IMG/VR virus record: IMGVR_UViG_3300044997_001199
Location: 1-64,000 of that record
Reading direction: 5' to 3' (one strand)
DNA length: 64,000 nucleotides
Below the pieces are notes generated by a model. It searched no databases. It saw only the letters and a program-made list of their open reading frames with translations, and had not been told where the DNA came from. The translations under genes were made by a program, and so were the position numbers. Numbering within the stretch: the stretch's first letter is position 1; every line of letters starts with the position of its first letter. This document shows positions 1 through 48,608 of this stretch, piece after piece.

Positions 1-2
1 AT

Positions 3-359
3 ACTGCCCGAGGTAAAATCTGTGATCGTGATGCGATCGCCCGAGCTTTAGAAAGTGGTCATTTAGCAGGATACGCAGGAGATGTCTGGTTTCCACAACC
101 AGCACCCCAAAACCATCCATGGCGCACTATGCCAAATCATGGCATGACTCCACATATTTCTGGAACCAGTTTGAGTGCTCAGACTCGTTATGCGGCAGGT
201 GTGCGAGAAGTATTGGAATGTTATTTTGAACACCGCCCTATTCGCAATGAGTACTTAGTGGTCAAAGATGGTGTGTTGGCCGGTGTTGGCGCCCACAGTT
301 ACTCCAAAGGTAATGCCACAGGTGGTAGTGAAGAGGCGACAAAATATAAATATAGATAG
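3..359 (+). CDS. fdh: NAD-dependent formate dehydrogenase, C-terminal part (5' truncated by window edge)
   Basis: Frame open from base 3: TARGKICDRDAIARALESGHLAGYAGDVWFPQPAPQNHPWRTMPNHGMTPHISGTSLSAQTRYAAGVREVLECYF...AHSYSKGNATGGSEEA, recognisably the C-terminus of bacterial NAD-FDH (Pseudomonas sp. 101 type) including the catalytic PHISG motif. Confidence 0.93.
   Translation, partial: TARGKICDRDAIARALESGHLAGYAGDVWFPQPAPQNHPWRTMPNHGMTPHISGTSLSAQTRYAAGVREVLECYFEHRPIRNEYLVVKDGVLAGVGAHSYSKGNATGGSEEATKYKYR
345..352 (+). promoter_or_regulatory. T4-type late promoter TATAAATA overlapping the fdh 3' end
   Basis: Exact T4 late consensus; directly upstream of a tmRNA-acceptor-like fragment, as for the intact tmRNA at 48470. 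Confidence 0.55.
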
Positions 360-360
360 T

Positions 361-415
361 AGGTATTGCTGTATGAAGTATAAGGAAAGATGAAGTATAA
401 GGAAAGGTGGTTTGG
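361..415 (+). pseudogene. Truncated copy of the 5' part of the tmRNA acceptor piece
   Basis: Removing one 17-bp duplicate gives AGGTATTGCTGTATGAAGTATAAGGAAAGGTGGTTTGG, a 33/38 match to the minus-strand tmRNA acceptor start (48430-48467) AGTTATTGCTGTATGAAGTTGAAGGAAAGGTGTTCTGG. Confidence 0.7.
373..406 (+). repeat. Perfect 17-bp tandem duplication ATGAAGTATAAGGAAAG x2
   Basis: 373-389 and 390-406 are identical. Confidence 0.97.
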
Positions 416-434
416 TGGCACCAAACCACCCTAC
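406..434 (-). repeat. GTAG-family REP-like palindrome
   Basis: Minus strand GTAG + GGTGGTTTGGTG-C-CACCAAACCACC (perfect 12-bp inverted repeat after a GTAG tetranucleotide). Confidence 0.6.
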
Positions 435-527
435 GACAACATCACTGGTATCAGCCGCGCTGTGATGAAAGACAATGCGCGGGAAACCATTGCCAACTAC
501 AACGGTAATGCTCGACCCGGAGAATAG
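429..527 (+). pseudogene. Possible orphan 3' end of a gene (PYDNITGISRAVMKDNARETIANYNGNARPGE*)
   Basis: Open frame starting inside the REP end, phage-like codons, followed by GGTAAAT; no start or RBS. Confidence 0.3.
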
Positions 528-651
528 TGGTAAATTTGGCAGTGGCCCGCTAAACGGGTTCTGAGTGACAGCGTTGTATACAAGGGTGCCGACACAATCT
601 AAACTTCCGATGTTGTTCAGCGACCCAAATTGTCAAGAAGGAGATGTTTAG

Positions 652-1020
652 ATGAAGCGCGTTGTTCTGACTGCCCTGCTGTTGGGCTTTGCCGCTCCGG
701 TCCTGGCCGACGATGCCCCCTACACGGTCAAGGACGGGCTGGTCGATGGCAAGACCTTCAAGGGTTTCCAAACGTGGCGCTCTGCGGCCTGCGAGCGTTG
801 CCACGGTGCCAACCAGGAGGGCCTGGTCGGTCCATCCCTGATTGATTCGCTCAAAAAGATGACCAAGGACGAGGTGATGACCACGATCGCCAAAGGCCGG
901 CCGGAAAGGGGCATGCCCCCGCACGACGCGCTCGGTGCCGAAAAAATCGATGCGCTCTACTCTTACCTCAAGGGTCGATCTGACGGCGCATTTCCGACCA
1001 AGGTCAAGTCGTTCGAGTAA
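652..1020 (+). CDS. Exported monohaem class I cytochrome c
   Basis: Signal peptide (MKRVVLTALLLGFAAPVLA), CERCH haem motif, distal Met in RGMPP, strong RBS AAGGAG; GC3-rich codons unlike the phage genes. Confidence 0.9.
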   Translation: MKRVVLTALLLGFAAPVLADDAPYTVKDGLVDGKTFKGFQTWRSAACERCHGANQEGLVGPSLIDSLKKMTKDEVMTTIAKGRPERGMPPHDALGAEKIDALYSYLKGRSDGAFPTKVKSFE

Positions 1021-1278
1021 GCCGCTCCTGCCGGTTGGCGCCTCCCGATGTGAGAAAAACAAGTAAGTCCGGTGGGCGATGCTCAGTTTGCCATCGGGGC
1101 GATCCATAGAGGCACGGTAACTGCCGAGAACGGACGAGATGGGCGACGCGGCCGGTATTGGCATTGGCGCGGCTTACTACCGGCAATCGGGACAGGTGTT
1201 TGTGTGCTTGACCTGACCGATCAGCTGGGCGAGTCTGCAAAAATTCATAAATAATTTCGTAGAACACCGAGATAACGC

Positions 1279-1425
1279 ATGGTCAAACCCAAACCTACTG
1301 AAGTAACCCCTTGATATCTGCGCAACATCACCTTGACCCTGGCAGTGTCCTATACCGGTACCAACAGTGACTTGTTATATAAACTGGGCTGGGAAGAACC
1401 CACAAACCAGACGGAATCAAAATGA
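1279..1425 (+). pseudogene. Small phage ORF with one in-frame TGA (1312-1314)
   Basis: MVKPKPTEVTP*YLRNITLTLAVSYTGTNSDLLYKLGWEEPTNQTESK*; follows TAAATA at 1248 and ends in an ATGA overlap with the nuclease start. Confidence 0.5.
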
Positions 1426-1868
1426 AAACAATCTTAGCAACAGTGTTTACAGTATTCGCAATGATGGGCTCAGCCTATGCGCAGAAGCAGCCCAAAAATT
1501 CAGCCACAAATGACGCACAGGTCCTGCGTGTGATTGACGGCGATACCATCATTATCTCAGCACCATTCCTGCCAGCACCACTCAAGCCAGAACTCGCAGT
1601 TCGCATCTACGGAGTGGACACTCCGGAAAAAGGCCACCGTGCGCAGTGCCCAAGCGAAGATCAACGTGGGCAACTGGCTACCAAGTTTACCACACAGGCC
1701 GTGGCCCAGAGCACGGAGCGACGAGTGGTACTCTATGGTTGGGACAAGTTTGGTGGACGCGTGCTGGGCGACATCATGTTGGACGGTCGCAGCCTGCGTG
1801 CCATGCTAATCGAACAAGGGCTGGCGCGTGAGTACCACGGCGAAACCAAACAGAGCTGGTGCCGGTAA
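1422..1868 (+). CDS. Thermonuclease (SNase-like) family nuclease
   Basis: VIDGDT, RIYGVDTPE, DKFGGRVLG and GLAREY motifs; N-terminal signal-like segment. Confidence 0.9.
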   Translation: MKTILATVFTVFAMMGSAYAQKQPKNSATNDAQVLRVIDGDTIIISAPFLPAPLKPELAVRIYGVDTPEKGHRAQCPSEDQRGQLATKFTTQAVAQSTERRVVLYGWDKFGGRVLGDIMLDGRSLRAMLIEQGLAREYHGETKQSWCR

Positions 1869-3017
1869 CTAGATCTTGAACCACGACAGGTACTGATGCA
1901 CCCGATTGGTCACTGACGCCCAGTCATCAAATGCCGATTGCCGAAACAGTCTCGCGGCGGAATACCACGGCGAATCATCGCGATCCAACAGCCAGCGCCA
2001 GTCCACTCCAAACTTTTGCAACATCACCCAGGTGGGACGACCCAACGCACCACCGAGGTGTGCGATCGCAGTGTCCACACTGAGTATGACATCTTGATGA
2101 GCGATCAAGGCAGCGGTGTCGTGGAATCCGCGTATGGTACCGGGATACAGTTTCACACCGGCTGCAGCCAGAGCAGCACTTTCCTCTTCGGTGGCGTCGA
2201 TCTGTAGATTGGTCCACTCATACTGAGGATTTTTCTCAATTAGATCTAGCATGACTCGGAAAGGCATGCCCTTGTGCTGGTTCAGCCAGGAATCTCTACG
2301 GCCGGACCAGGAAAAACCCACACGCATGCGAGTTTTTGGTCCCAGGCGCTCCTGCCATCTCTGGGTCAACTCACGGTCCGCAGACATGTAACTGACTGGC
2401 CGCGGCAGATTGTCGTAGGTCACACCCAATATTCCGGGAATGCTCATGACAGGCACCCAAACATCAAACTCGCCCGGGTCATCGGTGTAGGTACCAGCCC
2501 AGGCAACCACAGCACTGCCTTGGAACATGGGCACCAGGCCCGCGGTGACCTGCAATTTTATTCGTGCACCCATGACATGCAGATTGTAGGCAAAACGAGA
2601 AAACTGTATGTTGTCTCCGTGGCCTTGCTCGCCTACGATTAGCACAGTCTTGCCCTGGAGGTCTTCACCACGCCATCGCGGCTGTGCAAACTTGGGTTCG
2701 GTTCCGGCTAGATGTTCGTAGTTCCATCGGGCCTCGTAGGCCGGCCATCCCTGGCGCAGATTGCCCATGAGAAGATGAGTGACAGCCAGATTGAACTGTG
2801 CAGTGACATTGTTGGGTTCCAGCGTCAGAGCCTGCTGTAAAAAAGGTACGGCTGATCCTGGCTCCCCTATTTCTCGCAGCACGTTGCCGTAGTTGTTAAA
2901 GGCCGCAGCTGATCTGCGATCCTGTGCAAAGGCCTGTGCATAACAGGTCAGTGCCTGCTCGTACTGACGCTGTTCTCTGTGTTGATTGCCGATTACAATG
3001 AGTTCTTGGGTTTGCAT
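1869..3017 (-). CDS. TPR-repeat protein fused to a GT9/heptosyltransferase-like domain
   Basis: TPR helices (AFNNYGNVLRE, AQFNLA) then EQGHGDNIQF and DVILSVDTAIAHLGGALGRPTW..DWRW motifs. Confidence 0.8.
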   Translation of the reverse strand: MQTQELIVIGNQHREQRQYEQALTCYAQAFAQDRRSAAAFNNYGNVLREIGEPGSAVPFLQQALTLEPNNVTAQFNLAVTHLLMGNLRQGWPAYEARWNYEHLAGTEPKFAQPRWRGEDLQGKTVLIVGEQGHGDNIQFSRFAYNLHVMGARIKLQVTAGLVPMFQGSAVVAWAGTYTDDPGEFDVWVPVMSIPGILGVTYDNLPRPVSYMSADRELTQRWQERLGPKTRMRVGFSWSGRRDSWLNQHKGMPFRVMLDLIEKNPQYEWTNLQIDATEEESAALAAAGVKLYPGTIRGFHDTAALIAHQDVILSVDTAIAHLGGALGRPTWVMLQKFGVDWRWLLDRDDSPWYSAARLFRQSAFDDWASVTNRVHQYLSWFKI

Positions 3018-3061
3018 GGAAGATATTTACTCACGCTAGATAATTGATTGTAGATTATTGG

Positions 3062-3067
3062 TAAATA
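3062..3067 (+). promoter_or_regulatory. Late promoter TAAATA, with a divergent copy on the minus strand at 3024-3029
   Basis: Same hexamer recurs upstream of many structural genes. Confidence 0.6.
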
Positions 3068-3151
3068 CTTGTCAACGCAAACGGCGTTTTATGCGGAAAC
3101 CACCGCGTAGTGGCTAGAACCCACATCGGACTTCTTTAAAGGAGAAAACAA

Positions 3152-3901
3152 ATGGGACGTCCTCTCAAAATTCAAAAACTTTCCACCGGCTCGGGCAACA
3201 GCGGAGAGTCAGTCGGTGTGGATCTTGGCTTTCCTAACTTTGGAAGCCTGACCAATCCGGTCTACAACACCGCTGACACCCTCAACAGCACACAGTTTCT
3301 GGGTGTGGTTGGTGGAGCCAACCCCACAGATACCCCCAGCACCACATTTCCTCGAGTGAGAGTGATTGTCAACATACAGCTGACATCAGGATCGGGTCAA
3401 GGTGTGGCCACTGGTTACATCATCCGCCAAAAAGGTGCCCACAAGTACCTGGTAGGATCAACCACTACCGTCCAGGACGAAGGCATCGTGACTGGAAATT
3501 CCTACATCATTGCCACAGTGGGCAGCACTGACTGGACACTGTTTGGCGCACCAGCTGGCTATGCAGTGGGCACAGTGTTTACAGCCACTGCAGAAGGTTC
3601 CAACAACGGCAATGGTACCTGTAACCTAGTGGGAGTCTGCGTGCTGGATGACGATACCACACCTGCTGCAGGATTGATGGCCATTACCTATACCCTGGGC
3701 GACTCCACGGCCACTACCATCAGCAAATTAACCAACAAGTGGTTGTTGAACTGGGCCGGCGGCAGTGATTATGCTGCTACCAGTGTGGTCAATAATCAAC
3801 GCTATGCGGCCAACTTCTTCACCGACGAAGGCACAGTGATCAAGTCAGGCACACCGCAAACCGCTGTGGAACTGGCCATAGTAGACAACGTCACCTCATA
3901 A
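3152..3901 (+). CDS. Hypothetical virion structural protein
   Basis: 249-aa Thr/Gly-rich ORF, RBS AAGGAG, late promoter upstream. Confidence 0.75.
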   Translation: MGRPLKIQKLSTGSGNSGESVGVDLGFPNFGSLTNPVYNTADTLNSTQFLGVVGGANPTDTPSTTFPRVRVIVNIQLTSGSGQGVATGYIIRQKGAHKYLVGSTTTVQDEGIVTGNSYIIATVGSTDWTLFGAPAGYAVGTVFTATAEGSNNGNGTCNLVGVCVLDDDTTPAAGLMAITYTLGDSTATTISKLTNKWLLNWAGGSDYAATSVVNNQRYAANFFTDEGTVIKSGTPQTAVELAIVDNVTS

Positions 3902-3950
3902 AAGTGTTGTGATATCCGGTCCTTCCAGATACATACTGGAAGGACTTTTT

Positions 3951-4538
3951 ATGCCCGCAGCATTTGTGTTAGGTAATGGACGCAGTCGTCTAGCAGTGAA
4001 TCTCCACGAATTAAAACTTCGCGGGCCTATCTATGGATGCAATGCTCTCTATAGGGAATTTGTTCCTGACACATTGATCAGCACAGATCGACCTATCAGT
4101 GAGCGCATACAGCAGGAAGGATATGCGCTTAAAAATCGCATGTATACCCGCAAGCCCATGGCTCAATGGGGGGCTTTGCCGGTACCTCAAGAATACTATG
4201 GATTCAGTTCAGGGCCAATCGCAATGGCACAGGCCGCACTGGACGGCCATTGTGTGCTGTATCTCCTGGGATTTGACCTTGGTCCAGATGCCTTGGGCAA
4301 ATTCAACAATGTCTATGTTGACACAGAATTTTATAAAAAAAGCTCGGCCAGTCCCACCTTTACTGGTAACTGGGTCCGGCAAATCTGTCAGATAATGAAA
4401 ACCTTTCAGCGAGTGAGTTTTGTCAGAGTAGCCGGAGATACCACTGCTCCTGTTGCGGAATTCCAAACACATCACAATCACTGTGTCATGCCAATAACGG
4501 AATTTTTAGACCGTATAAATAATCTAAAGGATCTATAA
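3951..4538 (+). CDS. Hypothetical protein, possibly a sugar/nucleotide transferase-like fold
   Basis: AFVLGNGRSR...GCNALYR...LLGFD pattern; ATG at 3951 after RBS. Confidence 0.6.
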   Translation: MPAAFVLGNGRSRLAVNLHELKLRGPIYGCNALYREFVPDTLISTDRPISERIQQEGYALKNRMYTRKPMAQWGALPVPQEYYGFSSGPIAMAQAALDGHCVLYLLGFDLGPDALGKFNNVYVDTEFYKKSSASPTFTGNWVRQICQIMKTFQRVSFVRVAGDTTAPVAEFQTHHNHCVMPITEFLDRINNLKDL

Positions 4539-7130
4539 ATGGCCACTTTCAAGCGCATCAATGGCAATTATACTATCAAAACTCTAAATCACACGGACAC
4601 AGTCACTGTGGACGCTGTCAACACTGTGATCACCGGCGATCTAACAGTGCAGGGCAATGCCACATTGGTTGGTAATATCAATGCTGATCGTATTTTTTAT
4701 GGTAATTCCAGCGTGGAAATACCTGTTCCGGGCGGCAATGTCGCGGTGTCAGTGGACGGAACCAGCAACGTAGCGGTGTTTTCGTCATCGACGCTGTCGG
4801 TGTCTGGCAACATTGCAGGCAACTACTTTCTAGGCAACGGCAGTCAGTTGATCGGGGTGGTAGCCACGGATCTTGGCGTGATACCCACTCTCAGCGTGAC
4901 CGGAAATATCGATGCAGGCAATGTGCGTACCGCTGATCAGATCTCGGCCACAGGCGATGTCACTGGCGGCAACCTGCTGACATCGGGCAATGTGTCCTCT
5001 CAAGGCAATGTAATTGCCACGCAGTTCCGTGGTGACCTGATTGGCAGTGTGTTTGCTGACGATTCCAGCTTGATCGTGGATGCCATTGACAGTTGTATCT
5101 TTGCTAACTCAGTAGCAGCACTGGGCAACGTCACTGGCGGCAATTTCATCACTGCAGGAACAATCACTGCCACTGGTAATATCGTTACTGCAGGAACCTT
5201 TGTTGGTAATTTTTCAGGCAACATCACTGGAAATTTAACAGTGCCCGGATCCAACACACAGATCATTTTCAACAATCAGGACAATGCAGCGGCATCAAGT
5301 GCATTTACCTTTGACTCGGCCGGTAATACTCTGACTGTGGCAGGTACGGCCACAGTCACAGGCAACGTCGTGGCTGGCAACGTCAATACCGCTGATCAGA
5401 TATCAGCAACCGGCAATGTCACCGCAGGCAATGTGTTGGTCGGGGACACGGTCAATGCCACCACGTATACCGGAACCGCAGTTTCTGTGACCGGTAACGT
5501 CACTGGTGGCAACCTGATTTCCAGCAACATTGTGTCCAGCAACCTTACCATGACAGCAGCAAATGTGACCTTTGCGCTGTCAGGCAATGTAAATCTAGGC
5601 ACCAGTTATATCAACAATGTAAACTCTCCCATACAAGGCAGTGATGCAGCTACCAAACAATATGTAGACGATTCGGTGTCCACCGGAATCATCATACACA
5701 CCCCGGTTCGTGTGGAGTCGCCCACAGCTCTGACTGCCACGTATGCACCGGGGGGAAATGTGTTCACGGTGACCGATACCATAGACGGCAACACCGTGGT
5801 GTTCAGCACCGCGGCCAACCTGCAGGTCAACGACCAGTTGTGGTTTGCCAATTCTTTCCAAGGTATCACAGCCAACAACGCTTATTTCGTGGTGTCCGCA
5901 CCCAACACCAGCGCAGCGGTGTTGACCACTACCTACAATGGTTTGCCGGTCAGCAATATCACATCGGCGTCGGGGATGACTCAATCGGTGCGTGTGAATT
6001 CAGGTGTCGGTGCCACCCTGACCAATGCCGGGGACAATGCTGCATTGATAATCGATGGTATCACACTGGCAGCCAACGATCGGGTATTAGTGTATACTCA
6101 GGCCAATGCTGCTCACAATGGTGTATACACAGTGAGCAACGTGGGCAATGCCACTGTGGCCTGGGTCATGACCAGGTCTTCCGACACAGATACATATGCA
6201 CCAGACGACATCAACGCCTTGGACGCCGGTGATTATTTTTTTGTACAACAAGGTGACACCGGCGAGGGCGAAAGCTATGTGATGACCTTACCAGTGGGTC
6301 CACTGATCATAGGCTACAACAATCTGGTGTTCACACAATTTTCAGCCAGCAAGGCCTATCAAGCCGGCGATGGGCTGACACTGACTGGCACCACATTCAG
6401 TGTTAATATTGACAACACTACCACGGCCATCGTGGCCGATGTGGTAGTAGTTAAATCTGGAGCCAACCTAGTCACACCCAACATTGGCAATGCTACAGGC
6501 AACAGTCTCACACTGGACGGCAACGGTGCGATCAATACAACCACGGCCACGGCCACCGGTAACATTGTTGGTGGTAATGTCCTAACCGCAGGCCTGATTT
6601 CGGCCACTGGCAATGTGTCAGGCGGTAACTTGTCGGCCGGGCTTGGCACAGTTACCCTTGGCAATATCGTAAATGCCAACGGCAACGGAGTAGGCAATAT
6701 CGGCAGTGCTTCGTTGTATTTCGATACAGTGTTTGCCAAGGCTACGTCTGCGCAATACGCGGACTTGGCCGAAATGTATGCAGCAGACAGTCACTACGAA
6801 ACGGGCACAGTATTGTCCATGGGCGGAACCCACGAAGTAACATTATCTAATCATGCCAACGATCAACGAGTGGCCGGAGTAGTGTCGGCCAATCCGGCCT
6901 ATATCATGAACACAACTATCCAGGCACAATATCCAGTAGCATTGGCATTGGCCGGTCGCGTTCCTACCAATGTGATTGGCCCAGTACGCAAAGGAGACAT
7001 GATGGTAGCAGCTGGTAACGGCCGCGCACAGTCCTGCACCGCACCTGCGATTGGTACCGTGATTGGCAAAAGTCTCGAGGATTTCGATGGAATCCACGGC
7101 ACTATCGAAATAATAGTGGGCCGCCTGTGA
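4539..7130 (+). CDS. Fibre/appendage protein with GN-rich repeats and C-terminal intramolecular chaperone (peptidase G2-like) domain
   Basis: TGNV-GGN repeats; C-terminal SAQYADLAEMY...AGVVSANPAYIMN...GRVP...GDMMV...IGKSLE. Confidence 0.8.
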   Translation: MATFKRINGNYTIKTLNHTDTVTVDAVNTVITGDLTVQGNATLVGNINADRIFYGNSSVEIPVPGGNVAVSVDGTSNVAVFSSSTLSVSGNIAGNYFLGNGSQLIGVVATDLGVIPTLSVTGNIDAGNVRTADQISATGDVTGGNLLTSGNVSSQGNVIATQFRGDLIGSVFADDSSLIVDAIDSCIFANSVAALGNVTGGNFITAGTITATGNIVTAGTFVGNFSGNITGNLTVPGSNTQIIFNNQDNAAASSAFTFDSAGNTLTVAGTATVTGNVVAGNVNTADQISATGNVTAGNVLVGDTVNATTYTGTAVSVTGNVTGGNLISSNIVSSNLTMTAANVTFALSGNVNLGTSYINNVNSPIQGSDAATKQYVDDSVSTGIIIHTPVRVESPTALTATYAPGGNVFTVTDTIDGNTVVFSTAANLQVNDQLWFANSFQGITANNAYFVVSAPNTSAAVLTTTYNGLPVSNITSASGMTQSVRVNSGVGATLTNAGDNAALIIDGITLAANDRVLVYTQANAAHNGVYTVSNVGNATVAWVMTRSSDTDTYAPDDINALDAGDYFFVQQGDTGEGESYVMTLPVGPLIIGYNNLVFTQFSASKAYQAGDGLTLTGTTFSVNIDNTTTAIVADVVVVKSGANLVTPNIGNATGNSLTLDGNGAINTTTATATGNIVGGNVLTAGLISATGNVSGGNLSAGLGTVTLGNIVNANGNGVGNIGSASLYFDTVFAKATSAQYADLAEMYAADSHYETGTVLSMGGTHEVTLSNHANDQRVAGVVSANPAYIMNTTIQAQYPVALALAGRVPTNVIGPVRKGDMMVAAGNGRAQSCTAPAIGTVIGKSLEDFDGIHGTIEIIVGRL

Positions 7131-7152: not shown

Positions 7153-7572
7153 CTAGGTCACCGAGTCGAGTTTTTGTAATACAGACTCTATGTTCACGGT
7201 ATTCCATAGTCCAGGGTGCATGGGCCGAGGCCATTGACCTGGGTCGATCCAGGCATATCCCAGGTGCTCGGTGTTCAGTCGCGGTTGGAACTCGTCCTTG
7301 ATCACACAGATCCAGGTGTTGTATTCAAATCTACCGTCGGCTGTGGTGAACTTTTCCAATGGAACCAACCGACGATAGGTCGGAAAATGCCCCAATTCTT
7401 CGCTGCATTCTCTTTGCATGCCTTGTAGCAGGGTTTCCCCAGGCTCAATTTTTCCACCGGGCAATCCCCAAGTTCCGGGATTTTTACAATCATTTCTTAG
7501 CAAGTAGAGATACCGCTCAGTGGCAGCACTCCTGAACCATACACCCACTGCCTTTACAACACCAGTCTCCAT
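7153..7572 (-). CDS. NUDIX hydrolase
   Basis: Nudix box GGKIEPGETLLQGMQRECSEELG; start position uncertain. Confidence 0.88.
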   Translation of the reverse strand: METGVVKAVGVWFRSAATERYLYLLRNDCKNPGTWGLPGGKIEPGETLLQGMQRECSEELGHFPTYRRLVPLEKFTTADGRFEYNTWICVIKDEFQPRLNTEHLGYAWIDPGQWPRPMHPGLWNTVNIESVLQKLDSVT

Positions 7573-8960
7573 TTGCCCCCCACATATGTTCCTTGATAAC
7601 TTTTGACCCACATCTCCCCGGTCCATCGATACTGGATACCACTGGTAATGTTGGTAATATATTGTATGGCAGTTTCCTGCGCAGCATGAAACAGCACACG
7701 CCAGTAACCGTAATCGTCATCGTACTCGATGATATCATTGGCTTCGGCGATCAAAGACCGTCCGTTGTGCCCGATCCAGGCTGTGGGATTGCTTTGGTTG
7801 TCAAAATTTCCAGTGGCTTCGGTAAGCAGATATCTTTGCCCAGGTTGTGTGGGAGGCAGCCTGTCGCCGGGTCCGCTGATTAATGGATCAACCACAGCAT
7901 CAACTGGGGGCAAGGTGTTTTGCGGAATAGTATCGATGTCTACGTCGTAGATCACAAAGATATCATCGTTGGGATCAACCACAATGGTACCAATCACGTC
8001 GGTGCCATCGGGCTGTTCCAGTCGAATCTGGCTGATTCCTGGACGCAGAGTTCCATACATGTTGATCACAGCAGGCCATTGTAGGGTTGAAGTTAGCAGT
8101 GGCTCAGGATCGACCAACGCGTCGTTGTCGGGCTCTCGGCTGAGATCCTGCTGCTCAAGACATTGTATTCGATTGCCAAGCACTACCAGCGCATAGTTAA
8201 ACGGAGTCACAACCACTCTGGTACCCAACAATAGATCATTGTTGATCACGGCCTCGGCTAGATCGCCCTGGGCATCATGCATGCTTATGATTATGCGTTC
8301 TACCACGCCCAGTTTTTTTACCTTGGCCGGGGGTGACAACCAGATCGGCAGGTTGAATTTCACGGTTGCGATGTCGATGGGATTTTCAGTGCCTACGGGA
8401 ATCACACGACTGGACCAGTTAACCGATTCCAGTTCCAGCACAGTAAGACTGGTCCAGTCGATAAAGTTGTCTGTGCTCTGGATTTCGAGACTGGGATTGA
8501 ACAGTGTCAACATCTGTTCCAACAGTTGTAGTTTCTGATTGGTGTTGGAGGTCCAGATGTCAAGATTGATAGTTAATTGATACGGAACCGGCATCAGTCG
8601 TTCTATGGTAAATGCATTGCCTTGTGTGGTTTCGTAGGTTTCAGTGGAGGTATCGTAGGTCCGCTGTCTTACCGATACCTTGCTTACATGATAGGGTTCT
8701 TGCATGCGCGGCCGATCATAGTTCAGTGCTGCGATGTAAAAGGTCATCATAGGCGTAGCAGGCATGGAATTTTTGCTGTTTTCCTGCAGTATGGTCTGGG
8801 CCTGGCGGCTGGCATCCCCGTAGCGCACAGGCACACGTATCAACGCAGCAGCATTGCCATCTTCATCTCTGCCATATTCGACCTGAAAGTTGCTGACAAT
8901 GCGAGTGAACTGAAGGAGAAATCTGCGTATTTGTTCGTCGTAGAAAAATTGAGATACCAT
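7554..8960 (-). CDS. gp15: T4 gp15-like tail sheath stabiliser/terminator with C-terminal extension
   Basis: FFYDEQIRRFLLQF, VPVRYG, PVPYQLTINLDIWT...QLLEQMLTLFNPS pattern; lies in neck/tail cluster. Confidence 0.7.
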   Translation of the reverse strand: MVSQFFYDEQIRRFLLQFTRIVSNFQVEYGRDEDGNAAALIRVPVRYGDASRQAQTILQENSKNSMPATPMMTFYIAALNYDRPRMQEPYHVSKVSVRQRTYDTSTETYETTQGNAFTIERLMPVPYQLTINLDIWTSNTNQKLQLLEQMLTLFNPSLEIQSTDNFIDWTSLTVLELESVNWSSRVIPVGTENPIDIATVKFNLPIWLSPPAKVKKLGVVERIIISMHDAQGDLAEAVINNDLLLGTRVVVTPFNYALVVLGNRIQCLEQQDLSREPDNDALVDPEPLLTSTLQWPAVINMYGTLRPGISQIRLEQPDGTDVIGTIVVDPNDDIFVIYDVDIDTIPQNTLPPVDAVVDPLISGPGDRLPPTQPGQRYLLTEATGNFDNQSNPTAWIGHNGRSLIAEANDIIEYDDDYGYWRVLFHAAQETAIQYITNITSGIQYRWTGEMWVKSYQGTYVGGKWRLVL

Positions 8961-9517
8961 TATTCTTTTTCCATATAAATTCTTTTGCCATCTACAATTT
9001 TCCAAGTTTTACCACGAGTACCACTGCGTTCTAATTGGATTTGTCTAATTTTTTCTTTAGCACAATCTGGCATAGACCATCGTCCTTTTATTCCTCTTCC
9101 AGTATGAGCTTTACCCTTCATAGCACCACCATCTCGTCTTGTCCGGGTATCGGTACCTAACGCGCGCCGACGTGCATGAGCCTTTCTTTGTGATTCTCGC
9201 ATTTTTTCTATGCTTTTTGGGTTATGTAATTTGTTGCCACCGGCTTCTCTATTGTTATAAACAACAGCAATTTTTTGATAATGTTCCAACCAGGCCTGTT
9301 CTTTTTCGTTTAGCTTGTTGATATTGTTGGCGGCATCTATCACTTTCCACAAAAAATTTTCGATGCCATATTTTCTCACGCTATCATAAAGATAGCTTTT
9401 GCGTCCTTTATGCATGTAATCACAATGGGCATACCATCTTATCTTAGGATTTTTTTGAACCGTTTGTCCAATGTACACTTTGTTATTGATCTTGTTAGTA
9501 ATCTTATAAATGTGCAT
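8960..9517 (-). CDS. Free-standing GIY-YIG homing endonuclease
   Basis: HIYKITNKINNKVYIGQT motif, basic C-terminal DNA-binding tail, AT-rich relative to neighbours. Confidence 0.88.
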   Translation of the reverse strand: MHIYKITNKINNKVYIGQTVQKNPKIRWYAHCDYMHKGRKSYLYDSVRKYGIENFLWKVIDAANNINKLNEKEQAWLEHYQKIAVVYNNREAGGNKLHNPKSIEKMRESQRKAHARRRALGTDTRTRRDGGAMKGKAHTGRGIKGRWSMPDCAKEKIRQIQLERSGTRGKTWKIVDGKRIYMEKE

Positions 9518-29348: not shown

Positions 29349-31649
29349 ATGGCTAATACTATTCTTATTAAACGCAGTGAAACACCCAATGTTGCACCGA
29401 CGGCCAATGTGCTGTCGTCAGGGGAACTCGCGATTAACACTGCCGATGGCAAACTGTTCTTCAAGGACGCCTCTGGTAACGTGCAGGTTCTGGCCAGTAT
29501 CGGCTCACAGACATTTACTGGCAACGTCACAGCCGGTAACCTGTTAAGCAATGGCATAGTTTCAGCAGTCAGTACCGTAACCGGTGGCAACTTGGCCACA
29601 GCTGGTACAGTATCAGCAGCTGGTAACATCACTGGTGCTAACGTAAGCACAGCTGGTACAGTGTCAGCAGCCAGTACCGTGACCGGTGGCAACCTGGCCA
29701 CAGGTGGTACACTGAGCGCAGCTGGAACTGCCACAGTGGGCAACCTGGACACAGCTGGTACAGTATCAGCAGCTGGTAACATCACTGGTGCTAACGTAAG
29801 CACAGCTGGTACAGTGTCAGCAGCCAGTACCGTGACCGGTGGCAACCTGGCCACAGGTGGTACACTGAGCGCAGCTGGAACTGCCACAGTGGGCAATCTG
29901 GACACAGCTGGTGCGGTATCAGCAGTCAGTACCGTAACCGGTGGCAACTTGGCCACAGCTGGTACAGTATCAGCAGCTGGTAACATCACTGGTGCCAATC
30001 TGTTCACTGCTGGCAACGTCAGTGCTACTGGTAACGTGCATGGCAACTTTATACTGGGCAACGGCGCGTTTTTGACTGGTATTGACGCTACCAGCATCCA
30101 GAGCGGCACATCGAATGTTAGAATCGACGGCGTCAACGGCAACGTTGACATGAACATTGCTGGCAACTTGGTTGCCACGGTCCTTGCCAGCGGACTCGAA
30201 GTAACTGGCACTATCAGCGCCACTGGCGACATCACCGGTGCCAATGTGGCCACAGGTGGTACACTGAGCGCAGCTGGAACCGCCACAGTGGGCAACCTGG
30301 ACACAGCTGGTGCGGTATCAGCAGCCAGTACCGTGACCGGTGGCAACCTGGCCACAGGTGGTACACTGAGCGCAGCTGGAACTGCCACAGTGGGCAACCT
30401 GGACACAGCTGGTACAGTATCAGCAGCCAGTACCGTGACCGGTGGCAACCTGGCCACGGGTGGTACACTGAGCGCAGCTGGAACTGCCGCTCTCGGTGGC
30501 GATCTAGCGGTCAACGGCAACACTATAGCGGGCAACCTGGCCACGGGTGGTACACTGAGCGCAGCTGGAACTGCCACAGTGGGCAACCTAGCCACGGGTG
30601 GTACCGTGTCGGCCACTGGCAACATCGCCGGTGGCAATGTGGCCACAGCTGGTACAGTGTCGGCTGCAGGCAACATTGACGGTGCCAACCTACGCACAGC
30701 TGGTTTGGTTTCGGCCACTGGCAACATCGCCGGTGGCAATGTGGCCACAGCTGGTACAGTGTCGGCTGCAGGCAACATTGACGGTGCCAACCTACGCACA
30801 GCTGGTTTGGTTTCGGCCACTGGCGACATCACCGGTGGCAATGTGGCCACAGCTGGTACAGTGTCGGCCACTGGCAACATCGCCGGTGGCAATGTGGCCA
30901 CAGCTGGTACAGTGTCGGCTGCAGGCAACATTGACGGTGCCAACCTACGCACAGCTGGTTTGGTTTCGGCCACCGGCAACGTAGACGGTGCCAATTTCGT
31001 TACCACAGGTGCAGTGAACGCCGGAACCCTGTTCACAACTGGCAACGCCGTTATCGGCGGCGACCTAGCGGTCAACGGCAACACTATCAACATCAACATC
31101 ACTGACCTGAACATTGAAGATCCCATCATTGGTCTGGGTCGCGGTGCCAACAACTCACCGCTGAGTACCAATGATGGCAAGGATCGCGGCGAGCAACTGT
31201 GGTATTTTGATAGCTCGGAAGAATCGGCCTTCATTGGTTTCCAAAACTCAACCGGCAAGCTGATTGCTGCTGGCAATGTCACTATTGCCAACGAAATAGT
31301 CAGCGTACAATCTTACGGCGCGTTTGTTGTTGGTGACCTAGAAGGCACTACTGTCAGTGTATCGGGCAATGTCGCGGGCGGCAATGTGCTCACAGGCGGT
31401 GTAGTTTCGGCTGCTGGCAACATCACTGGTGCCAACGTAATCACGACCGGCATAGGTAACATCGCCACGCTGGAAGTAGGCACACTGGCCAACATCAAGG
31501 CTACCACAGCCAGTACCAATACCACTTCGGGTGCATTGGTCGTGGCAGGTGGTGTTGGTGTGGCAGGAAACGTGCATGCAACCAATATGTTCAAGAACGG
31601 CGTCACTGTGCTCAATGCAGATGACGCGGTGGATGGCGGTGTATTCTAA
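29349..31649 (+). CDS. Repeat-rich tail fibre protein
   Basis: MANTILIKRS...GELAINTADGKLFFK; many 12-aa GNL.TAGTVSAA repeats, near-identical at DNA level. Confidence 0.85.
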   Translation: MANTILIKRSETPNVAPTANVLSSGELAINTADGKLFFKDASGNVQVLASIGSQTFTGNVTAGNLLSNGIVSAVSTVTGGNLATAGTVSAAGNITGANVSTAGTVSAASTVTGGNLATGGTLSAAGTATVGNLDTAGTVSAAGNITGANVSTAGTVSAASTVTGGNLATGGTLSAAGTATVGNLDTAGAVSAVSTVTGGNLATAGTVSAAGNITGANLFTAGNVSATGNVHGNFILGNGAFLTGIDATSIQSGTSNVRIDGVNGNVDMNIAGNLVATVLASGLEVTGTISATGDITGANVATGGTLSAAGTATVGNLDTAGAVSAASTVTGGNLATGGTLSAAGTATVGNLDTAGTVSAASTVTGGNLATGGTLSAAGTAALGGDLAVNGNTIAGNLATGGTLSAAGTATVGNLATGGTVSATGNIAGGNVATAGTVSAAGNIDGANLRTAGLVSATGNIAGGNVATAGTVSAAGNIDGANLRTAGLVSATGDITGGNVATAGTVSATGNIAGGNVATAGTVSAAGNIDGANLRTAGLVSATGNVDGANFVTTGAVNAGTLFTTGNAVIGGDLAVNGNTININITDLNIEDPIIGLGRGANNSPLSTNDGKDRGEQLWYFDSSEESAFIGFQNSTGKLIAAGNVTIANEIVSVQSYGAFVVGDLEGTTVSVSGNVAGGNVLTGGVVSAAGNITGANVITTGIGNIATLEVGTLANIKATTASTNTTSGALVVAGGVGVAGNVHATNMFKNGVTVLNADDAVDGGVF

Positions 31650-45065: not shown

Positions 45066-45140
45066 TGGTACCTGGTGACGGGATCGAACCGCCGACCTTC
45101 TCCTTGTAAGGGAGACACTCTACCGCTGAGTTAACCAGGC
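45066..45140 (-). tRNA. tRNA-Val (TAC)
   Basis: Complete cloverleaf, loop CT-TAC-AA, TTCGATC T-loop, encoded CCA. Confidence 0.95.
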
Positions 45141-45145
45141 AATTC

Positions 45146-45180
45146 TAGTCGGAGTGCAAGGATTCCAACCCTACACTCCA
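45146..45180 (-). pseudogene. tRNA remnant folded as an acceptor+T-arm minihelix
   Basis: TGGAGTG-TAGGG-TTGGAAT-CCTTG-CACTCCG-ACTA; D and anticodon arms absent. Confidence 0.7.
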
Positions 45181-45183
45181 AAT

Positions 45184-45262
45184 TGGTCTCGATGGCAAGA
45201 TTCGAACTTGCGACATCCTGCTCCCAAAGCAGGCGGAATGAACCAGACTATCCTACACCGAT
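45184..45262 (-). tRNA. tRNA-Pro (TGG), first base pair mismatched
   Basis: Cloverleaf with CCTGC-TTTGGGA-GCAGG, CCA; A1:G72 mismatch. Confidence 0.88.
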
Positions 45263-45263
45263 T

Positions 45264-45337
45264 TGGTGGAGGATAACAGAATCGAACTGTTAATCTCGGC
45301 TTGCAAAGCCGATGTTATCCCATTTAACTAATCCCCC
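45264..45337 (-). tRNA. tRNA-Ala (TGC)
   Basis: G3:U70 identity pair, loop TT-TGC-AA, CCA. Confidence 0.93.
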
Positions 45338-45342
45338 AAACT

Positions 45343-45419
45343 TGGCTCCCCAGCGTGGGCTCGAACCACGGACATTCTGATTAACAGTCAGACGCATCTA
45401 CCAACTGTGCTACTGGGGA
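45343..45419 (-). tRNA. tRNA-Asn (GTT)
   Basis: TCTGA-CTGTTAA-TCAGA, full cloverleaf, CCA. Confidence 0.95.
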
Positions 45420-45425
45420 ATATTC

Positions 45426-45455
45426 TTAACTGCACTACCGCTGTACTACCTTGGA
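45426..45455 (-). pseudogene. 5' fragment of a tRNA (acceptor strand plus D arm)
   Basis: TCCAAGGTAGTACAGCGGTAGTGCAGTTAA; rest missing. Confidence 0.55.
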
Positions 45456-45462
45456 ATAAAAA

Positions 45463-45538
45463 TGGTGCCGGTTGTCGGATTCGAACTGACGACCTATCGC
45501 TTACAAGGCGATTGCAACTACCACTGTGCTAAACCGGC
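45463..45538 (-). tRNA. tRNA-Thr (TGT)
   Basis: ATCGC-CTTGTAA-GCGAT, full cloverleaf, CCA. Confidence 0.95.
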
Positions 45539-45564
45539 TTAAAACTATATATCTCTTTTATTGC

Positions 45565-45654
45565 TGGCGGAGAGTATGAGATTCGAATCTAAGTGTCCAT
45601 TTCTGAACGACGGGTTAGCAAACCGCTGCGTTAACCACTCTCGGTCAACTGTCA
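45565..45654 (-). pseudogene. Degenerate tRNA-Ser (GCT)
   Basis: Long variable arm, loop TT-GCT-AA, 3' ACTCTCC-GCCA but 5' strand TGACAGT mismatched. Confidence 0.75.
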
Positions 45655-45661
45655 AATTTTT

Positions 45662-45739
45662 AAGTAGGGCCCCGGAGGATCGAACTCCGAACCTATCCAT
45701 TATGAGTGGATTGCTCTAGACCAATTGAGCTAGGGCCCT
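45662..45739 (-). tRNA. tRNA with CAT anticodon, probably Ile2 (lysidine) rather than Met
   Basis: AGGGCCC acceptor, ATCCA-CTCATAA-TGGAT; CCA not encoded (ACTT); adjacent to tilS. Confidence 0.85.
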
Positions 45740-45781
45740 GTGACTTTACAACTAAAATTTTTCCGCGTTCGCAATGTTGCA

Positions 45782-45811
45782 ATTATAACCAGTGTCTTTG
45801 ATTCTTGTCAA
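45782..45811 (-). promoter_or_regulatory. sigma70-type promoter for the tRNA cluster
   Basis: TTGACA-N18-TATAAT. Confidence 0.7.
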
Positions 45812-46397
45812 GGATTTTTCTTTGCACCATGGTAGCGATTCCAGGATTTACTTTAAGAATTTCGGGCATGACGGCATGTCGGATCTGATTACGACTGTAT
45901 CGCAGATCACGATTGCTGTGGTCTTCGTACCAGGTCACAGCGTGCCGCTGAGTCCAGGCAACCAGCTGTTGTTTGGGTGTTCTTAGGAACGGTCTCACAC
46001 AGCGTCCTCGCTGATAGTTCATGATTCTGGGCTGACCATGACACGATCCCCAGATCCAAGTTTCCACGGCATCGTCGAGATGATGGGCCAAAACCACCGG
46101 TTCGGATCCTGGCAAACGGTCAAGGAATCCATAGCGTTCGTTGCGCCAGTGTTCTTCGGGACTGATGCCCGGGGGCCTCGGTTGAGAGATTTTTCCGATG
46201 GCGAGAGGTATGTCATGCTGCGAGCAGTACGTCCTGACCGTGGCCAGGCCATGCTCACTGGCCACGGTACCGTGATCAAAAAAGGCCACCTGGGTATGGT
46301 GTCGCCGACGGAGAAAGTCCAGGGCTGCCATGGAATCCAACCCGCCTGAGCAGGCGACGACAACAGTTCTAGGCAGGGCGTTCAACAACCTGATCAT
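45783..46397 (-). CDS. tilS: tRNA(Ile)-lysidine synthetase, short form
   Basis: ACSGGLDSMA PP-loop, RNERY, LAHHLDDAVET, RPFL, W.EDHSN, RNQIRH. Confidence 0.9.
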   Translation of the reverse strand: MIRLLNALPRTVVVACSGGLDSMAALDFLRRRHHTQVAFFDHGTVASEHGLATVRTYCSQHDIPLAIGKISQPRPPGISPEEHWRNERYGFLDRLPGSEPVVLAHHLDDAVETWIWGSCHGQPRIMNYQRGRCVRPFLRTPKQQLVAWTQRHAVTWYEDHSNRDLRYSRNQIRHAVMPEILKVNPGIATMVQRKILDKNQRHWL

Positions 46398-46401
46398 GTA
46401 A

Positions 46402-47461: not shown

Positions 47462-47484
47462 CAAATTTCTCAAGGAAACTGTCA

Positions 47485-47850: not shown

Positions 47851-47851
47851 T

Positions 47852-47927: not shown

Positions 47928-47930
47928 GTG

Positions 47931-48128: not shown

Positions 48129-48157
48129 AAAGAAAATGGCCCATCGCTGGGCCATTT
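48129..48157 (-). terminator. Intrinsic terminator after the tmRNA coding piece
   Basis: AAATGGCCCA-GCGA-TGGGCCATTT then TCTTT. Confidence 0.8.
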
Positions 48158-48467
48158 GGTCGTTCTGTTGCCAGGTGACCAACCCCGACAGATCAAGCCG
48201 CTAGGCGGAGATCCTCAGCATAAACGTCGTCATTGGCGTTTATAAGTTTTGCTAGGTTTACGACCTTCGCCTCTCGTGCTGTCTGTATCTGTACTCATTT
48301 GTCCTGTCGAAACCAAAACCGGCCCATCATAAGCATACTAGATTTTATCGATACTACCGAATAATGGGAGGGCGACTCCATCTTACACCAGTATGCTTAT
48401 GGTGGACCGGGCGAGAGTCGAACTCGCGTCCAGAACACCTTTCCTTCAACTTCATACAGCAATAACT
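48130..48467 (-). ncRNA. ssrA: Circularly permuted two-piece tmRNA
   Basis: Acceptor piece ending GTTCGACTCTCGCCCGGTCCACCA (CCA at 48400) lies upstream of the coding piece starting GGGCCGGTTTTGGTTTCGAC (48325); G3:U70; tag ANDDVYAEDLRLAA* at 48237-48193. Confidence 0.92.
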
Positions 48468-48608
48468 GTTATTTATGTATTTTTTTGAACAGTCGGCAGT
48501 CTTCTGTGCTTCTTCGTTGTACCACAGACGTCGAGTGTAGTCCTGATCGATGTCCCGAAGATACTGGTCGGTGAAATACTTCACATGACCCTTGACCAAA
48601 TAAAACAA
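48354..48608 (-). CDS. Small hypothetical protein; 3' part reads into the tmRNA, so its true end is uncertain
   Basis: MFYLVKGHVKYFTDQYLRDIDQDYTRRLWYNEEAQ looks coding; the remainder overlaps promoter and RNA. Confidence 0.4.
   Translation of the reverse strand: MFYLVKGHVKYFTDQYLRDIDQDYTRRLWYNEEAQKTADCSKKYINNSYCCMKLKERCSGREFDSRPVHHKHTGVRWSRPPIIR

What the first reader, a model, noticed from the sequence alone, without database searches (positions are those of the whole stretch)
345..415. Second, broken copy of the tmRNA acceptor-piece start 48 kb from the intact one
Seen: TAAATA followed by a 33/38 match to the tmRNA acceptor start at 48430-48467, in opposite orientation. It breaks just before the T-arm, where a 17-bp duplication and a palindrome occur. 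The five differences suggest another phage's allele. Inference: a tmRNA locus acted as an insertion or recombination target and was destroyed, or DNA from a related phage is mosaicked in.
Basis: partly seen in the sequence, partly recalled or inferred. Interest (0 to 1): 0.6.

Follow-up and report, generated by a model that had tools for sequence, protein, structure and literature searches.

The report
Leftover stub of a phage tmRNA gene
This is the dead front end (promoter plus about 45 bases) of a second tmRNA gene that rode into a freshwater giant phage with a borrowed formate dehydrogenase gene cassette; it is an ordinary scar of phage gene shuffling, though an unusually well documented one.

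Summary
Window 345-415 holds a T4-type late-promoter box (TATAAATA, 345-352). It is followed by the first ~45 nt of a two-piece tmRNA acceptor piece, a 17-nt tandem duplication (373-389, 390-406) and a 25-nt palindrome (406-430). There is no T-arm, no CCA end and no coding piece.

The window is the start of a 215-kb T4-like jumbo phage record from lake water. The phage's working tmRNA lies at 48131-48519 on the minus strand.

Related phage contigs settle the origin. L199, L122 and L128-L130 carry the same formate dehydrogenase (FDH) gene, up to 98.7% identical in nucleotides. In each, an intact, Rfam-scoring permuted tmRNA starts exactly where the fragment starts.

In the window phage this tmRNA stub is the right-hand end of a ~2-kb imported cassette (IscU', IscA', FDH, tmRNA'). 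The cassette sits in a variable region between the capsid gene and a TPR-glycosyltransferase gene. The redundant passengers have decayed and only FDH is intact. To the right lie ~110 nt of unknown origin, then a cytochrome c gene captured very recently from a Burkholderiales host.

Broken and intact alleles coexist in the same lake samples. The stub cannot act as a tmRNA, but it may still supply a late promoter. Interest is modest.

The parts
3..359 (+). 3' part (118 codons) of a phage-borne NAD-dependent formate dehydrogenase-like gene. The record starts inside the gene; the full 400-aa gene is seen in L054 12423-13625.
   Evidence: Pfam 2-Hacid_dh_C. The full gene with both domains is in L054. 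It lies downstream of the T4-like portal, protease and gp23 capsid genes.
345..352 (+). TATAAATA, the T4-type late-promoter consensus. It overlaps the last FDH codons and is the promoter of the former tmRNA gene.
   Evidence: Sequence. The same box in the same place precedes the intact tmRNAs of L199 and L122. TAAATA is about 8-fold enriched within 60 nt upstream of long ORFs in the 215-kb record (35 observed, 4.4 expected). 34 of 63 distinct phage tmRNA starts have TAAATA within 30 nt upstream.
362..409 (+). Remnant of the 5' end of a two-piece tmRNA acceptor piece (the 5' strand of helix P2), of the L199-like allele.
   Evidence: Alignment A2. blastn of L199 181-572 against window 1-392 gives 98.7%. 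The 16-nt core is the conserved start of about 100 phage permuted tmRNAs in IMG/VR.
373..406 (+). Exact 17-nt tandem duplication (373-389 and 390-406) inside the remnant. It places an AAGGA box 3 nt before the second ATG (390).
   Evidence: Sequence. The duplication is absent from the intact alleles L199 and L122. It is present in all copies of the broken allele.
406..430 (+). 25-nt near-perfect palindrome forming an 11-bp hairpin with no U tract after it. It sits at the break point.
   Evidence: strand folding. No terminator call was made here. The palindrome is found only in this phage's contigs in IMG/VR.
410..520 (+). About 110 nt of filler of unknown origin. ORF 390-527 (45 aa) begins in the duplicated stub and runs through it.
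   Evidence: No similarity to the rest of the genome, to the intact tmRNA loci or to any fetched locus. No match in three Burkholderiales-type MAGs. The ORF has no homologue in phage records.
521..1155 (+). Segment captured from a betaproteobacterial host, carrying a cytochrome c gene (652-1020) with its own upstream region.
   Evidence: Pfam Cytochrome_CBB3. 85% aa and 86% nt identity to a Burkholderiales MAG, flanks included. Bacterial contigs in the same lake runs match with 0-5 differences and leave the window at 539 and 1155.
1422..1868 (+). Staphylococcal-nuclease-like (thermonuclease) gene, the last gene of the inserted block before the conserved TPR-glycosyltransferase gene (1869-3017, minus strand).
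   Evidence: Pfam SNase. In 17 of 80 related loci it follows IscA or IscU-IscA, and none has a tmRNA within 3 kb.
48131..48519 (-). The phage's resident, intact two-piece tmRNA (tag ANDDVYAEDLRLAA), next to a tRNA cluster.
   Evidence: Rfam RF04321 123.1 bits and RF01850 121.9 bits. ARAGORN calls it at 48102-48492. It is the only tmRNA in the 215-kb record.

Best explanation
The element is a pseudogene stub: the late promoter and first ~45 nt of a second, FDH-linked two-piece tmRNA gene. It is the right-hand end of a ~2-kb cassette (IscU-IscA-FDH-tmRNA) that this freshwater T4-like jumbo phage took from another phage lineage. The cassette landed in the variable region between its capsid gene and a TPR-glycosyltransferase gene. 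The phage already had its own IscU, IscA and tmRNA, so the imported copies were redundant and have decayed, and only FDH stayed intact. The tmRNA copy lost everything from the T-arm onward at an illegitimate junction. That junction carries a 17-nt tandem duplication, a 25-nt palindrome and ~110 nt of filler, and it adjoins a cytochrome c gene captured very recently from the Burkholderiales host. The stub has no T-arm, CCA end, 5' acceptor strand or tag reading frame, so it cannot work in trans-translation. By inference only, its intact TATAAATA box may still start late transcripts that read through the hairpin, which has no U tract, towards the cytochrome c and nuclease genes.
For: Shown: (1) An intact permuted tmRNA sits at the same position after the same FDH gene in L199 (127.5 bits), L122 (110.4) and L128-L130 (138.8), each with a tag reading frame. 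(2) The window is 98.7% identical to L199 over 1-392, then unrelated. (3) Against L122 the shared DNA is only ~2 kb. It starts 66 nt after the capsid gene's stop, just past its terminator and inside IscU, and ends in the tmRNA start. (4) In the cassette, IscU is 5'-truncated with an in-frame stop, IscA is frameshifted and FDH is intact. Native intact IscU and IscA lie at 165.8-166.5 kb, and the native tmRNA at 48 kb. (5) The closest capsid relatives (92-97% aa) go straight from the capsid gene to the TPR-glycosyltransferase gene. (6) No other tmRNA piece exists in the 215 kb. (7) The junction is seen in independent assemblies, and intact alleles coexist in the same lake runs. (8) The cytochrome c segment is 86% nt identical to a Burkholderiales MAG. 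Bacterial contigs of the same runs match it with 0-5 differences. Inferred: promoter activity, from TAAATA enrichment upstream of ORFs and upstream of phage tmRNAs.
Against: The record is only about 61% complete by CheckV, so a displaced 3' part in the unseen remainder cannot be excluded. The direction of transfer rests on truncated cassette ends and synteny, not on a rooted tree. It is unresolved whether the tmRNA was cut when the cassette arrived or later, when the filler and host DNA were inserted. The origin of the filler and palindrome is unknown. No RNA data exist: no RNA run holds the region.
Confidence: 0.85

Rival explanations
1. The stub has been recruited. It works as a late promoter plus 5' leader for the downstream host-derived cytochrome c gene and the nuclease gene. 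Alternatively it makes a ~70-nt hairpin-ended small RNA that pairs with the resident tmRNA coding piece as a decoy or regulator. The 17-nt duplication would have been kept because it creates a ribosome-binding site and ATG.
For: The TATAAATA box is intact and this box type is enriched before genes. The hairpin has no U tract, so read-through is plausible. The duplication puts AAGGA 3 nt before ATG 390, which opens a 45-codon frame. In cofold the stub can pair with the resident coding piece, ddG about -10 kcal/mol against -11.3 for the resident's own first 39 nt. Other phages have the same promoter and start directly before protein genes (L023/L058). A CDS-less tmRNA of mycobacteriophage DS6A inhibits host tmRNA (PMC11915505).
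Against: The 45-aa frame has no homologues. The captured cytochrome c segment brought its own upstream region. The complete resident acceptor piece binds far better, ddG -26.8. The neighbouring passengers are plainly decaying. There are no expression data.
Confidence: 0.15
2. The break is the scar of a homing-endonuclease cut. An HNH endonuclease from a co-infecting phage cleaved the tmRNA gene near the T-arm. Error-prone repair then produced the duplication, the palindromic filler and the capture of host DNA. This is a special case of the best explanation, naming the cause of the break.
For: In L085 the same kind of tmRNA start is broken in the T-loop by an HNH endonuclease gene that abuts a complete tmRNA of another type. 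L092 keeps an orphan start, a C-terminal relic of that HNH gene and a complete tmRNA. HNH genes also sit just after the capsid gene in several relatives. Short duplications, snap-back palindromes and captured DNA are typical of error-prone break repair (general knowledge).
Against: There is no endonuclease gene or relic in the window or in the 215 kb. No replacement tmRNA follows the stub. The break point at 409-415 lies about 15 nt upstream of the L085 break. The cleavage site of these enzymes is unknown.
Confidence: 0.15
3. The fragment is an attachment-site remnant: an integrative element used a tmRNA gene as its target, as genomic islands do in bacteria, and displaced part of it.
For: tmRNA genes are common island integration sites and displaced fragments mark island ends (PMC4383910). 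ssrA fragments are known in prophages (PMC9004378).
Against: The genome is a T4-like phage with no integrase near 1-3200. The retained piece is the 5' promoter end. The two copies are inverted and are different alleles. No matching displaced 3' part is present. The FDH-tmRNA synteny in relatives explains the position.
Confidence: 0.03
4. The similarity is a general late-promoter-proximal motif, a chance match, or an assembly chimera that joins phage and host reads.
For: A late-promoter box is part of the match, and host-like DNA lies 110-130 nt away.
Against: The 16-nt core occurs only at the two sites in 215 kb, although there are 101 TAAATA sites. About 100 of 121 IMG/VR hits to the core are true tmRNA starts. 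The junction is identical in independent assemblies and runs.
Confidence: 0.02

Closest known systems
Two-piece (circularly permuted) tmRNA genes, betaproteobacterial and phage type (Rfam RF01850, RF04321); phage-borne examples such as OM43 phage Melnitz (PMC9004378)
   Same: The stub is homologous to the promoter and first ~45 nt (5' strand of helix P2) of such a gene. Intact orthologues sit at the same locus in related phages.
   Different: It lacks the T-arm, the 3' acceptor strand with CCA, the 5' acceptor strand and the tag reading frame. It does not score against either Rfam model (E > 5). It is a fragment, not a gene.
Hyperplastic regions and promoter/stem-loop (PeSL) cassettes that mediate modular shuffling in T4-like phages (PMC2839356, PMC4122927)
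   Same: It lies in a variable block between conserved late genes. A promoter followed by a stem-loop marks the border between unrelated modules, and neighbouring genes are swapped between related phages.
   Different: PeSLs are early sigma-70-type promoters with terminators, repeated many times per genome. Here the box is a late-type one, the hairpin has no U tract, and the unit is single-copy and derived from an RNA gene. The cassette's left end cuts through a gene (IscU) and the right junction shows no homology beyond a possible 3-nt GTG overlap, so the joins look illegitimate rather than motif-mediated.
Displaced tRNA/tmRNA gene fragments at the ends of genomic islands and ssrA fragments in prophages (PMC4383910; noted in PMC9004378)
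   Same: It is a partial tmRNA gene copy beside foreign DNA, with an intact copy elsewhere.
   Different: There is no integrase and no direct repeat. The 5' end is retained rather than the 3' end. The setting is a lytic-type T4-like phage, and the two copies are different alleles.
tmRNA genes interrupted in the T-loop by group I introns, some with homing endonuclease genes (PMC11915505)
   Same: The interruption lies close to the T-arm. Related phage contigs (L085, L092) show an HNH endonuclease gene at that place.
   Different: No downstream exon, intron fold or endonuclease gene is present here. The gene is truncated, not split.
CDS-less tmRNA-like RNA of mycobacteriophage DS6A, reported to inhibit host tmRNA (cited in PMC11915505)
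   Same: It is a reduced phage tmRNA derivative that could in principle interfere with trans-translation.
   Different: The DS6A form keeps the tRNA-like domain. The window stub keeps only one strand of helix P2.

Membership tests
Two-piece (permuted) tmRNA gene (RF04321 / RF01850) | Acceptor piece 5' strand of helix P2, homologous to known genes | tested here: met
   33/38 identity to the resident gene. Near-identity to the L199 allele up to position 392, and the conserved 16-nt start.
Two-piece (permuted) tmRNA gene (RF04321 / RF01850) | T-arm and 3' acceptor strand ending in CCA | tested here: not met
   The sequence after 409-415 is a palindrome and unrelated filler. ARAGORN finds nothing at 1-3200.
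Two-piece (permuted) tmRNA gene (RF04321 / RF01850) | Coding piece with 5' acceptor strand and tag reading frame ending in ..AA-stop | tested here: not met
   There is no second tmRNA piece in the window or in the 215-kb record. The L199 tmRNA body matches only the 48-kb gene.
Two-piece (permuted) tmRNA gene (RF04321 / RF01850) | Covariance-model score at or above the gathering threshold | tested here: not met
   No tmRNA-family hit at E <= 5 in 1-3200. The intact relatives score 110-139 bits.
Pseudogene or remnant of an orthologous locus | An intact gene at the syntenic position in relatives, with flanking homology | tested here: met
   FDH is followed at once by an intact tmRNA in L199, L122 and L128-L130. 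The FDH flank is 73-98.7% nt identical.
T4-type late promoter | TATAAATA box at a suitable distance before the transcribed unit | tested here: met
   The box is at 345-352, 11 nt before the conserved tmRNA start. TAAATA is enriched before ORFs and before phage tmRNAs.
T4-type late promoter | Late, gp55/gp33-dependent transcription initiation | not testable with these tools
   No RNA run holds the region.
tDNA-integrated island attachment site | Tyrosine integrase next to the split gene, and a direct repeat of the gene's 3' part | tested here: not met
   Neighbours are cytochrome c, a nuclease and a TPR-glycosyltransferase. The only other copy is inverted, complete and a different allele.
PeSL regulatory cassette of T4-like phages | Sigma-70-type early promoter plus terminator stem-loop, repeated through hyperplastic regions | tested here: not met
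   The box is late-type, there is no U tract, and both core and palindrome are single-copy in the genome. The setting in a hyperplastic region is met.

The most novel reading that the evidence does not exclude
In aquatic T4-like phages the tmRNA gene is a recurrent recombination and homing target. Free-standing HNH endonuclease genes linked to a resistant tmRNA allele replace resident alleles and leave orphan promoter-plus-5' stubs (L085, L092, L023). Such stubs, the window's included, are then reused as late promoter-leaders for newly captured genes, here a cytochrome c gene taken from the host. The window stub would be one scar of that process rather than an isolated accident.
Probability: 0.2. 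Interest if true: 0.55.

Novelty: new member of a known kind. Interest (0 to 1): 0.3.

Why it matters
This is a clean, datable example of how giant freshwater phages build their accessory gene sets. A metabolic gene (FDH) moved between phage lineages as a cassette, and its redundant passengers (IscU, IscA, tmRNA) decayed. Host DNA, a cytochrome c gene nearly identical to that of a bacterium in the same lake, was captured at the same spot. For annotation it is a warning: a conserved tmRNA start with a late promoter is not a tmRNA gene. It also gives a host link for an uncultured phage. It points to phage tmRNA loci, and to the region after the capsid gene, as hot spots of exchange. It does not reveal a new kind of molecule or mechanism.

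Tried and rejected
(1) The phage GenBank collection has no nucleotide match to 1-3200 or to the tmRNA region.

(2) A relaxed Rfam scan of 1-3200 for a hidden tmRNA remainder or an intron found only freshwater-2.

(3) A whole-record scan for a second tmRNA found only the 48-kb gene and a 13-bit noise hit.

One core-like hit (L369) is the 3' end of an IscA gene and is taken as coincidence.

(5) The origin of the filler 410-520 was sought in several places. The genome itself and all fetched loci gave no match. Phage records gave no match to the 45-aa frame. Three Burkholderiales-type MAGs gave none. A 35-nt exact metagenome scan was blank.

(6) The palindrome alone gave one metagenome hit (L364), inside a much longer unrelated inverted repeat. 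It is judged unrelated.

(7) The cytochrome c gene appears in IMG/VR only in this phage's own contig.

(8) The record does not close into a circle, and the FDH gene does not continue across its ends. The record is simply incomplete.

(9) The decoy-RNA idea: cofolding shows only weak pairing compared with the true acceptor piece. It is kept as a low-probability rival.

(10) No protein-structure, complex or large protein searches were needed.

Full report
**What the window is**

The window is bases 1-64000 of a single 215,330-nt IMG/VR virus record. IMG/VR classes the record as linear, and CheckV estimates it at about 61% complete. It encodes T4-like virion proteins, for example a gp15-like tail completion protein at 7554-9005. 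Its best phage relatives are jumbo myoviruses at 34-37% amino-acid identity.

The window holds eight tRNA genes at 45066-48058 and one two-piece (permuted) tmRNA gene on the minus strand. Rfam places the tmRNA at 48131-48519 (RF01850, 121.9 bits) and 48193-48461 (RF04321, 123.1 bits). ARAGORN places it at 48102-48492 with tag ANDDVYAEDLRLAA. The runs that hold the region are lake-water metagenomes.

**Checking the observation**

The fragment exists as described. The repeat finder ranks it as the longest inverted repeat in the window: 342-392 against 48436-48486, 51 nt at 78%, plus 390-415 against 48430-48455 at 85%. Reading the sequence gives, in order:
- TATAAATA at 345-352, inside the last codons of a dehydrogenase gene whose stop is at 357-359.
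- The conserved tmRNA start from 362.
- An exact 17-nt tandem duplication at 373-389 and 390-406.
- Three further matching bases.
- A 25-nt palindrome at 406-430, which folds into an 11-bp hairpin with no U tract after it.

With one duplicate copy removed, the match to the resident gene is 33 of 38 positions. The 16-nt core occurs exactly only at these two places in the 215 kb. Nothing resembling a T-arm, a CCA end or a coding piece follows.

**What it is: evidence from relatives**

An exact scan of IMG/VR with the 16-nt core returned more than 119 loci. About 100 of them are true permuted tmRNA starts, so this is the conserved 5' end of a large family of phage tmRNAs. Among 63 distinct starts, 34 have TAAATA within 30 nt upstream.

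One locus, L054, is the same phage. It carries 13.2 kb lying upstream of the window's first base. That stretch holds a T4-like baseplate protein, the portal (gp20), the prohead protease, the major capsid protein (gp23), an IscA-like gene and the complete 400-aa formate-dehydrogenase-like (FDH) gene. The FDH gene is therefore phage-borne, and the record simply begins inside it.

Searching IMG/VR with the FDH protein gave the decisive comparison:
- L199 has FDH 99% identical in protein, and its nucleotides are 98.7% identical to window 1-392.
- L122 has FDH 98% identical in protein.
- L128-L130 have FDH 84% identical in protein.

In each of these, the same TATAAATA-bearing end of the FDH gene is followed at once by an intact permuted tmRNA. 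The Rfam scores are 127.5, 110.4 and 138.8 bits, and the tags are ANDSDYTMALAA, ANDEKFALAA and ANAANDEVFALAA. The window follows L199 almost base for base up to 392 and is unrelated afterwards. The body of the L199 tmRNA matches nothing in the 215 kb except, distantly, the 48-kb gene. The fragment is therefore the stub of an FDH-linked tmRNA gene of the L199-like allele. It is not a copy of the resident gene.

**The stub is the edge of an imported cassette**

Against L122, the window phage (through L121, which is 99.95% identical to window 1-6356) shares only about 2 kb at 94%. The shared stretch begins 66 nt after the capsid gene's stop, just past its terminator and in the middle of an IscU gene. 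It ends in the tmRNA start.

L122 has complete IscU (128 aa) and IscA (103 aa, ending in the Cys-Gly-Cys motif). In the window phage the cassette copies are damaged. IscU lacks its first 17 codons and has an in-frame stop. IscA is frameshifted before the Cys motif. FDH is intact.

The phage has its own intact IscU and IscA at about 165.8-166.5 kb, and its own tmRNA at 48 kb. It has no other FDH. The closest capsid relatives (92-97% identity; L283, L285, L288, L297, L340) run directly from the capsid gene into the TPR-glycosyltransferase gene and the genes that follow it in the window. The roughly 5 kb from IscU' to the nuclease gene is therefore an insertion into a variable spot.

Both cassette ends cut through genes, and only the non-redundant gene has survived. 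That pattern argues that this phage was the recipient and that the tmRNA stub is a decaying passenger.

**What lies to the right of the stub**

Positions 410-520 match nothing I could find.

From about 521-539 to 1155 the DNA is bacterial. The cytochrome c gene (652-1020) and its flanks are 86% identical in nucleotides to a Burkholderiales MAG. In the lake runs, contigs with bacterial continuations match this stretch with 0-5 differences and leave it at 539 and 1155. One of them is a 15.7-kb contig. This is a very recent capture from the host.

The same runs confirm the junction. Contigs in X1 and X4 bridge 331-568 without any difference. They also show intact alleles in the same water: loose ends at 389 in X1 and X5 continue as the L199-type T-arm, and one at 378 in X8 continues as the L122 type.

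None of 80 nuclease-gene relatives has a tmRNA within 3 kb. In 17 of them the nuclease gene follows IscA or IscU-IscA. The nuclease gene may therefore have belonged to the same imported block.

**How it works, or does not**

Shown: the stub lacks every part needed for aminoacylation, SmpB binding and tagging, so it is not a tmRNA.

Inferred: its late-promoter box is intact. TAAATA-type boxes are about 8-fold enriched just upstream of long ORFs in this genome, and the hairpin has no U tract. Late transcripts may therefore start here and run towards the cytochrome c and nuclease genes.

The duplication happens to place a ribosome-binding-like AAGGA box before an ATG that opens a 45-codon frame. 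That frame has no homologues, and I treat it as accidental.

A decoy role is thermodynamically possible but weak. Pairing with the resident coding piece gives about -10 kcal/mol, against -26.8 for the true acceptor piece.

**What caused the break**

The cause is not resolved. The junction features are a short tandem duplication, a palindromic filler and captured host DNA, and they look like error-prone repair of a double-strand break.

Other phage contigs suggest one possible source of such breaks. In L085 the same kind of tmRNA start is broken in the T-loop by an HNH endonuclease gene (Pfam HNH) whose 3' end abuts a complete tmRNA of another type. L092 keeps an orphan start, a C-terminal relic of that endonuclease gene and a complete tmRNA. 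L023 and L058 keep an orphan start, then a small lipoprotein-like gene, then a complete tmRNA 525 nt downstream.

No endonuclease gene or relic is present in the window record. I therefore give this cause only about 15%.

**Comparison with what is known**

- Phage-borne two-piece tmRNAs are known, mostly from aquatic phages (PMC9004378).
- ssrA fragments in prophages, and displaced tDNA fragments at island ends, are known (PMC4383910).
- T-loop introns in tmRNA genes are known (PMC11915505).
- Variable regions of T4-like phages, where promoter/stem-loop cassettes mark module exchange, are known (PMC2839356, PMC4122927).

The present element fits this last picture in its setting but is not a PeSL. 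It fails the membership tests for a tmRNA gene and for an island attachment site. It is best filed as a tmRNA pseudogene remnant at a mosaic junction, which is a new member of a known kind.

**Verdict**

- Observation: confirmed.
- Confidence that this is a non-functional stub of an imported FDH-linked tmRNA: 0.85.
- Interest: 0.3.
- The more novel reading is that tmRNA loci are systematic homing and recombination targets whose stubs are reused as promoters. It has about 0.2 probability and would be moderately interesting.

Noticed in passing
window 3073-3154 (+), with ORF 3152-3901: The Rfam freshwater-2 RNA motif (RF02980, 79 bits), a motif of unknown role, sits as the 5' leader of a late gene and overlaps its ribosome-binding site and ATG. 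Relatives of the ORF it precedes follow the capsid and TPR-glycosyltransferase genes in the closest relatives. That points to a T4-like phage origin for this freshwater motif.
   Followed up: partly
window about 521-1155 (cytochrome c gene 652-1020): A cytochrome c gene with its flanks is 86% nt identical to a small-genome Burkholderiales MAG (L201). Bacterial contigs of the same lake runs match it with 0-5 differences. This is a very recent host-to-phage capture and a direct host clue.
   Followed up: partly
L121 5239-5878 (same as L054 11661-12300), just upstream of the window start; native copies at G000 165.8-166.5 kb (L365 1342-2042): The imported cassette's IscU is 5'-truncated with an in-frame stop and its IscA is frameshifted, while FDH is intact. 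The phage keeps its own intact IscU and IscA elsewhere. Redundant passengers decay and the novel gene is kept.
   Followed up: yes
L085 1-900 (minus strand); L092 9266-9700; L023 6709-7594: Other aquatic phage contigs hold orphan tmRNA starts upstream of a complete tmRNA of a different type. In L085 an HNH endonuclease gene lies between them, and in L092 a relic of that gene does. This looks like endonuclease-linked tmRNA allele replacement, which I did not find described in the two tmRNA papers I consulted (PMC9004378, PMC11915505).
   Followed up: partly
L286, L287, L294, L335, L346 (about 200 nt after the capsid gene): HNH endonuclease-like genes sit directly downstream of the major capsid gene in several relatives. 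This is the same variable spot where the window phage carries its imported block.
   Followed up: no
window 29349-31649, 32321-34939 and 4539-7130 (+): Large ORFs are built from dozens of 51-nt (17-aa) repeats, plus 9-nt Thr/Ala-rich runs at 32750-32811 and 34187-34284. They are presumably fibre-like virion proteins and have no Pfam match for 4539-7130.
   Followed up: no
L199 (sample 3300044957) against L121 (same sample); runs X1, X5, X8: Intact and broken FDH-linked tmRNA alleles coexist in the same lake samples. The phage with the intact allele has a different downstream neighbourhood (M15 peptidase through to gp32) and about 75% aa identity in a shared gene. The FDH cassette is therefore shared across distinct phages.
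   Followed up: partly
L369 2262-2284: The 3' end of IscA genes (codons for Ser-Phe-Ala-Val-stop) resembles the conserved tmRNA start at 14 of 16 bases. This is probably coincidence, but IscA and the tmRNA lie in the same cassettes.
   Followed up: no
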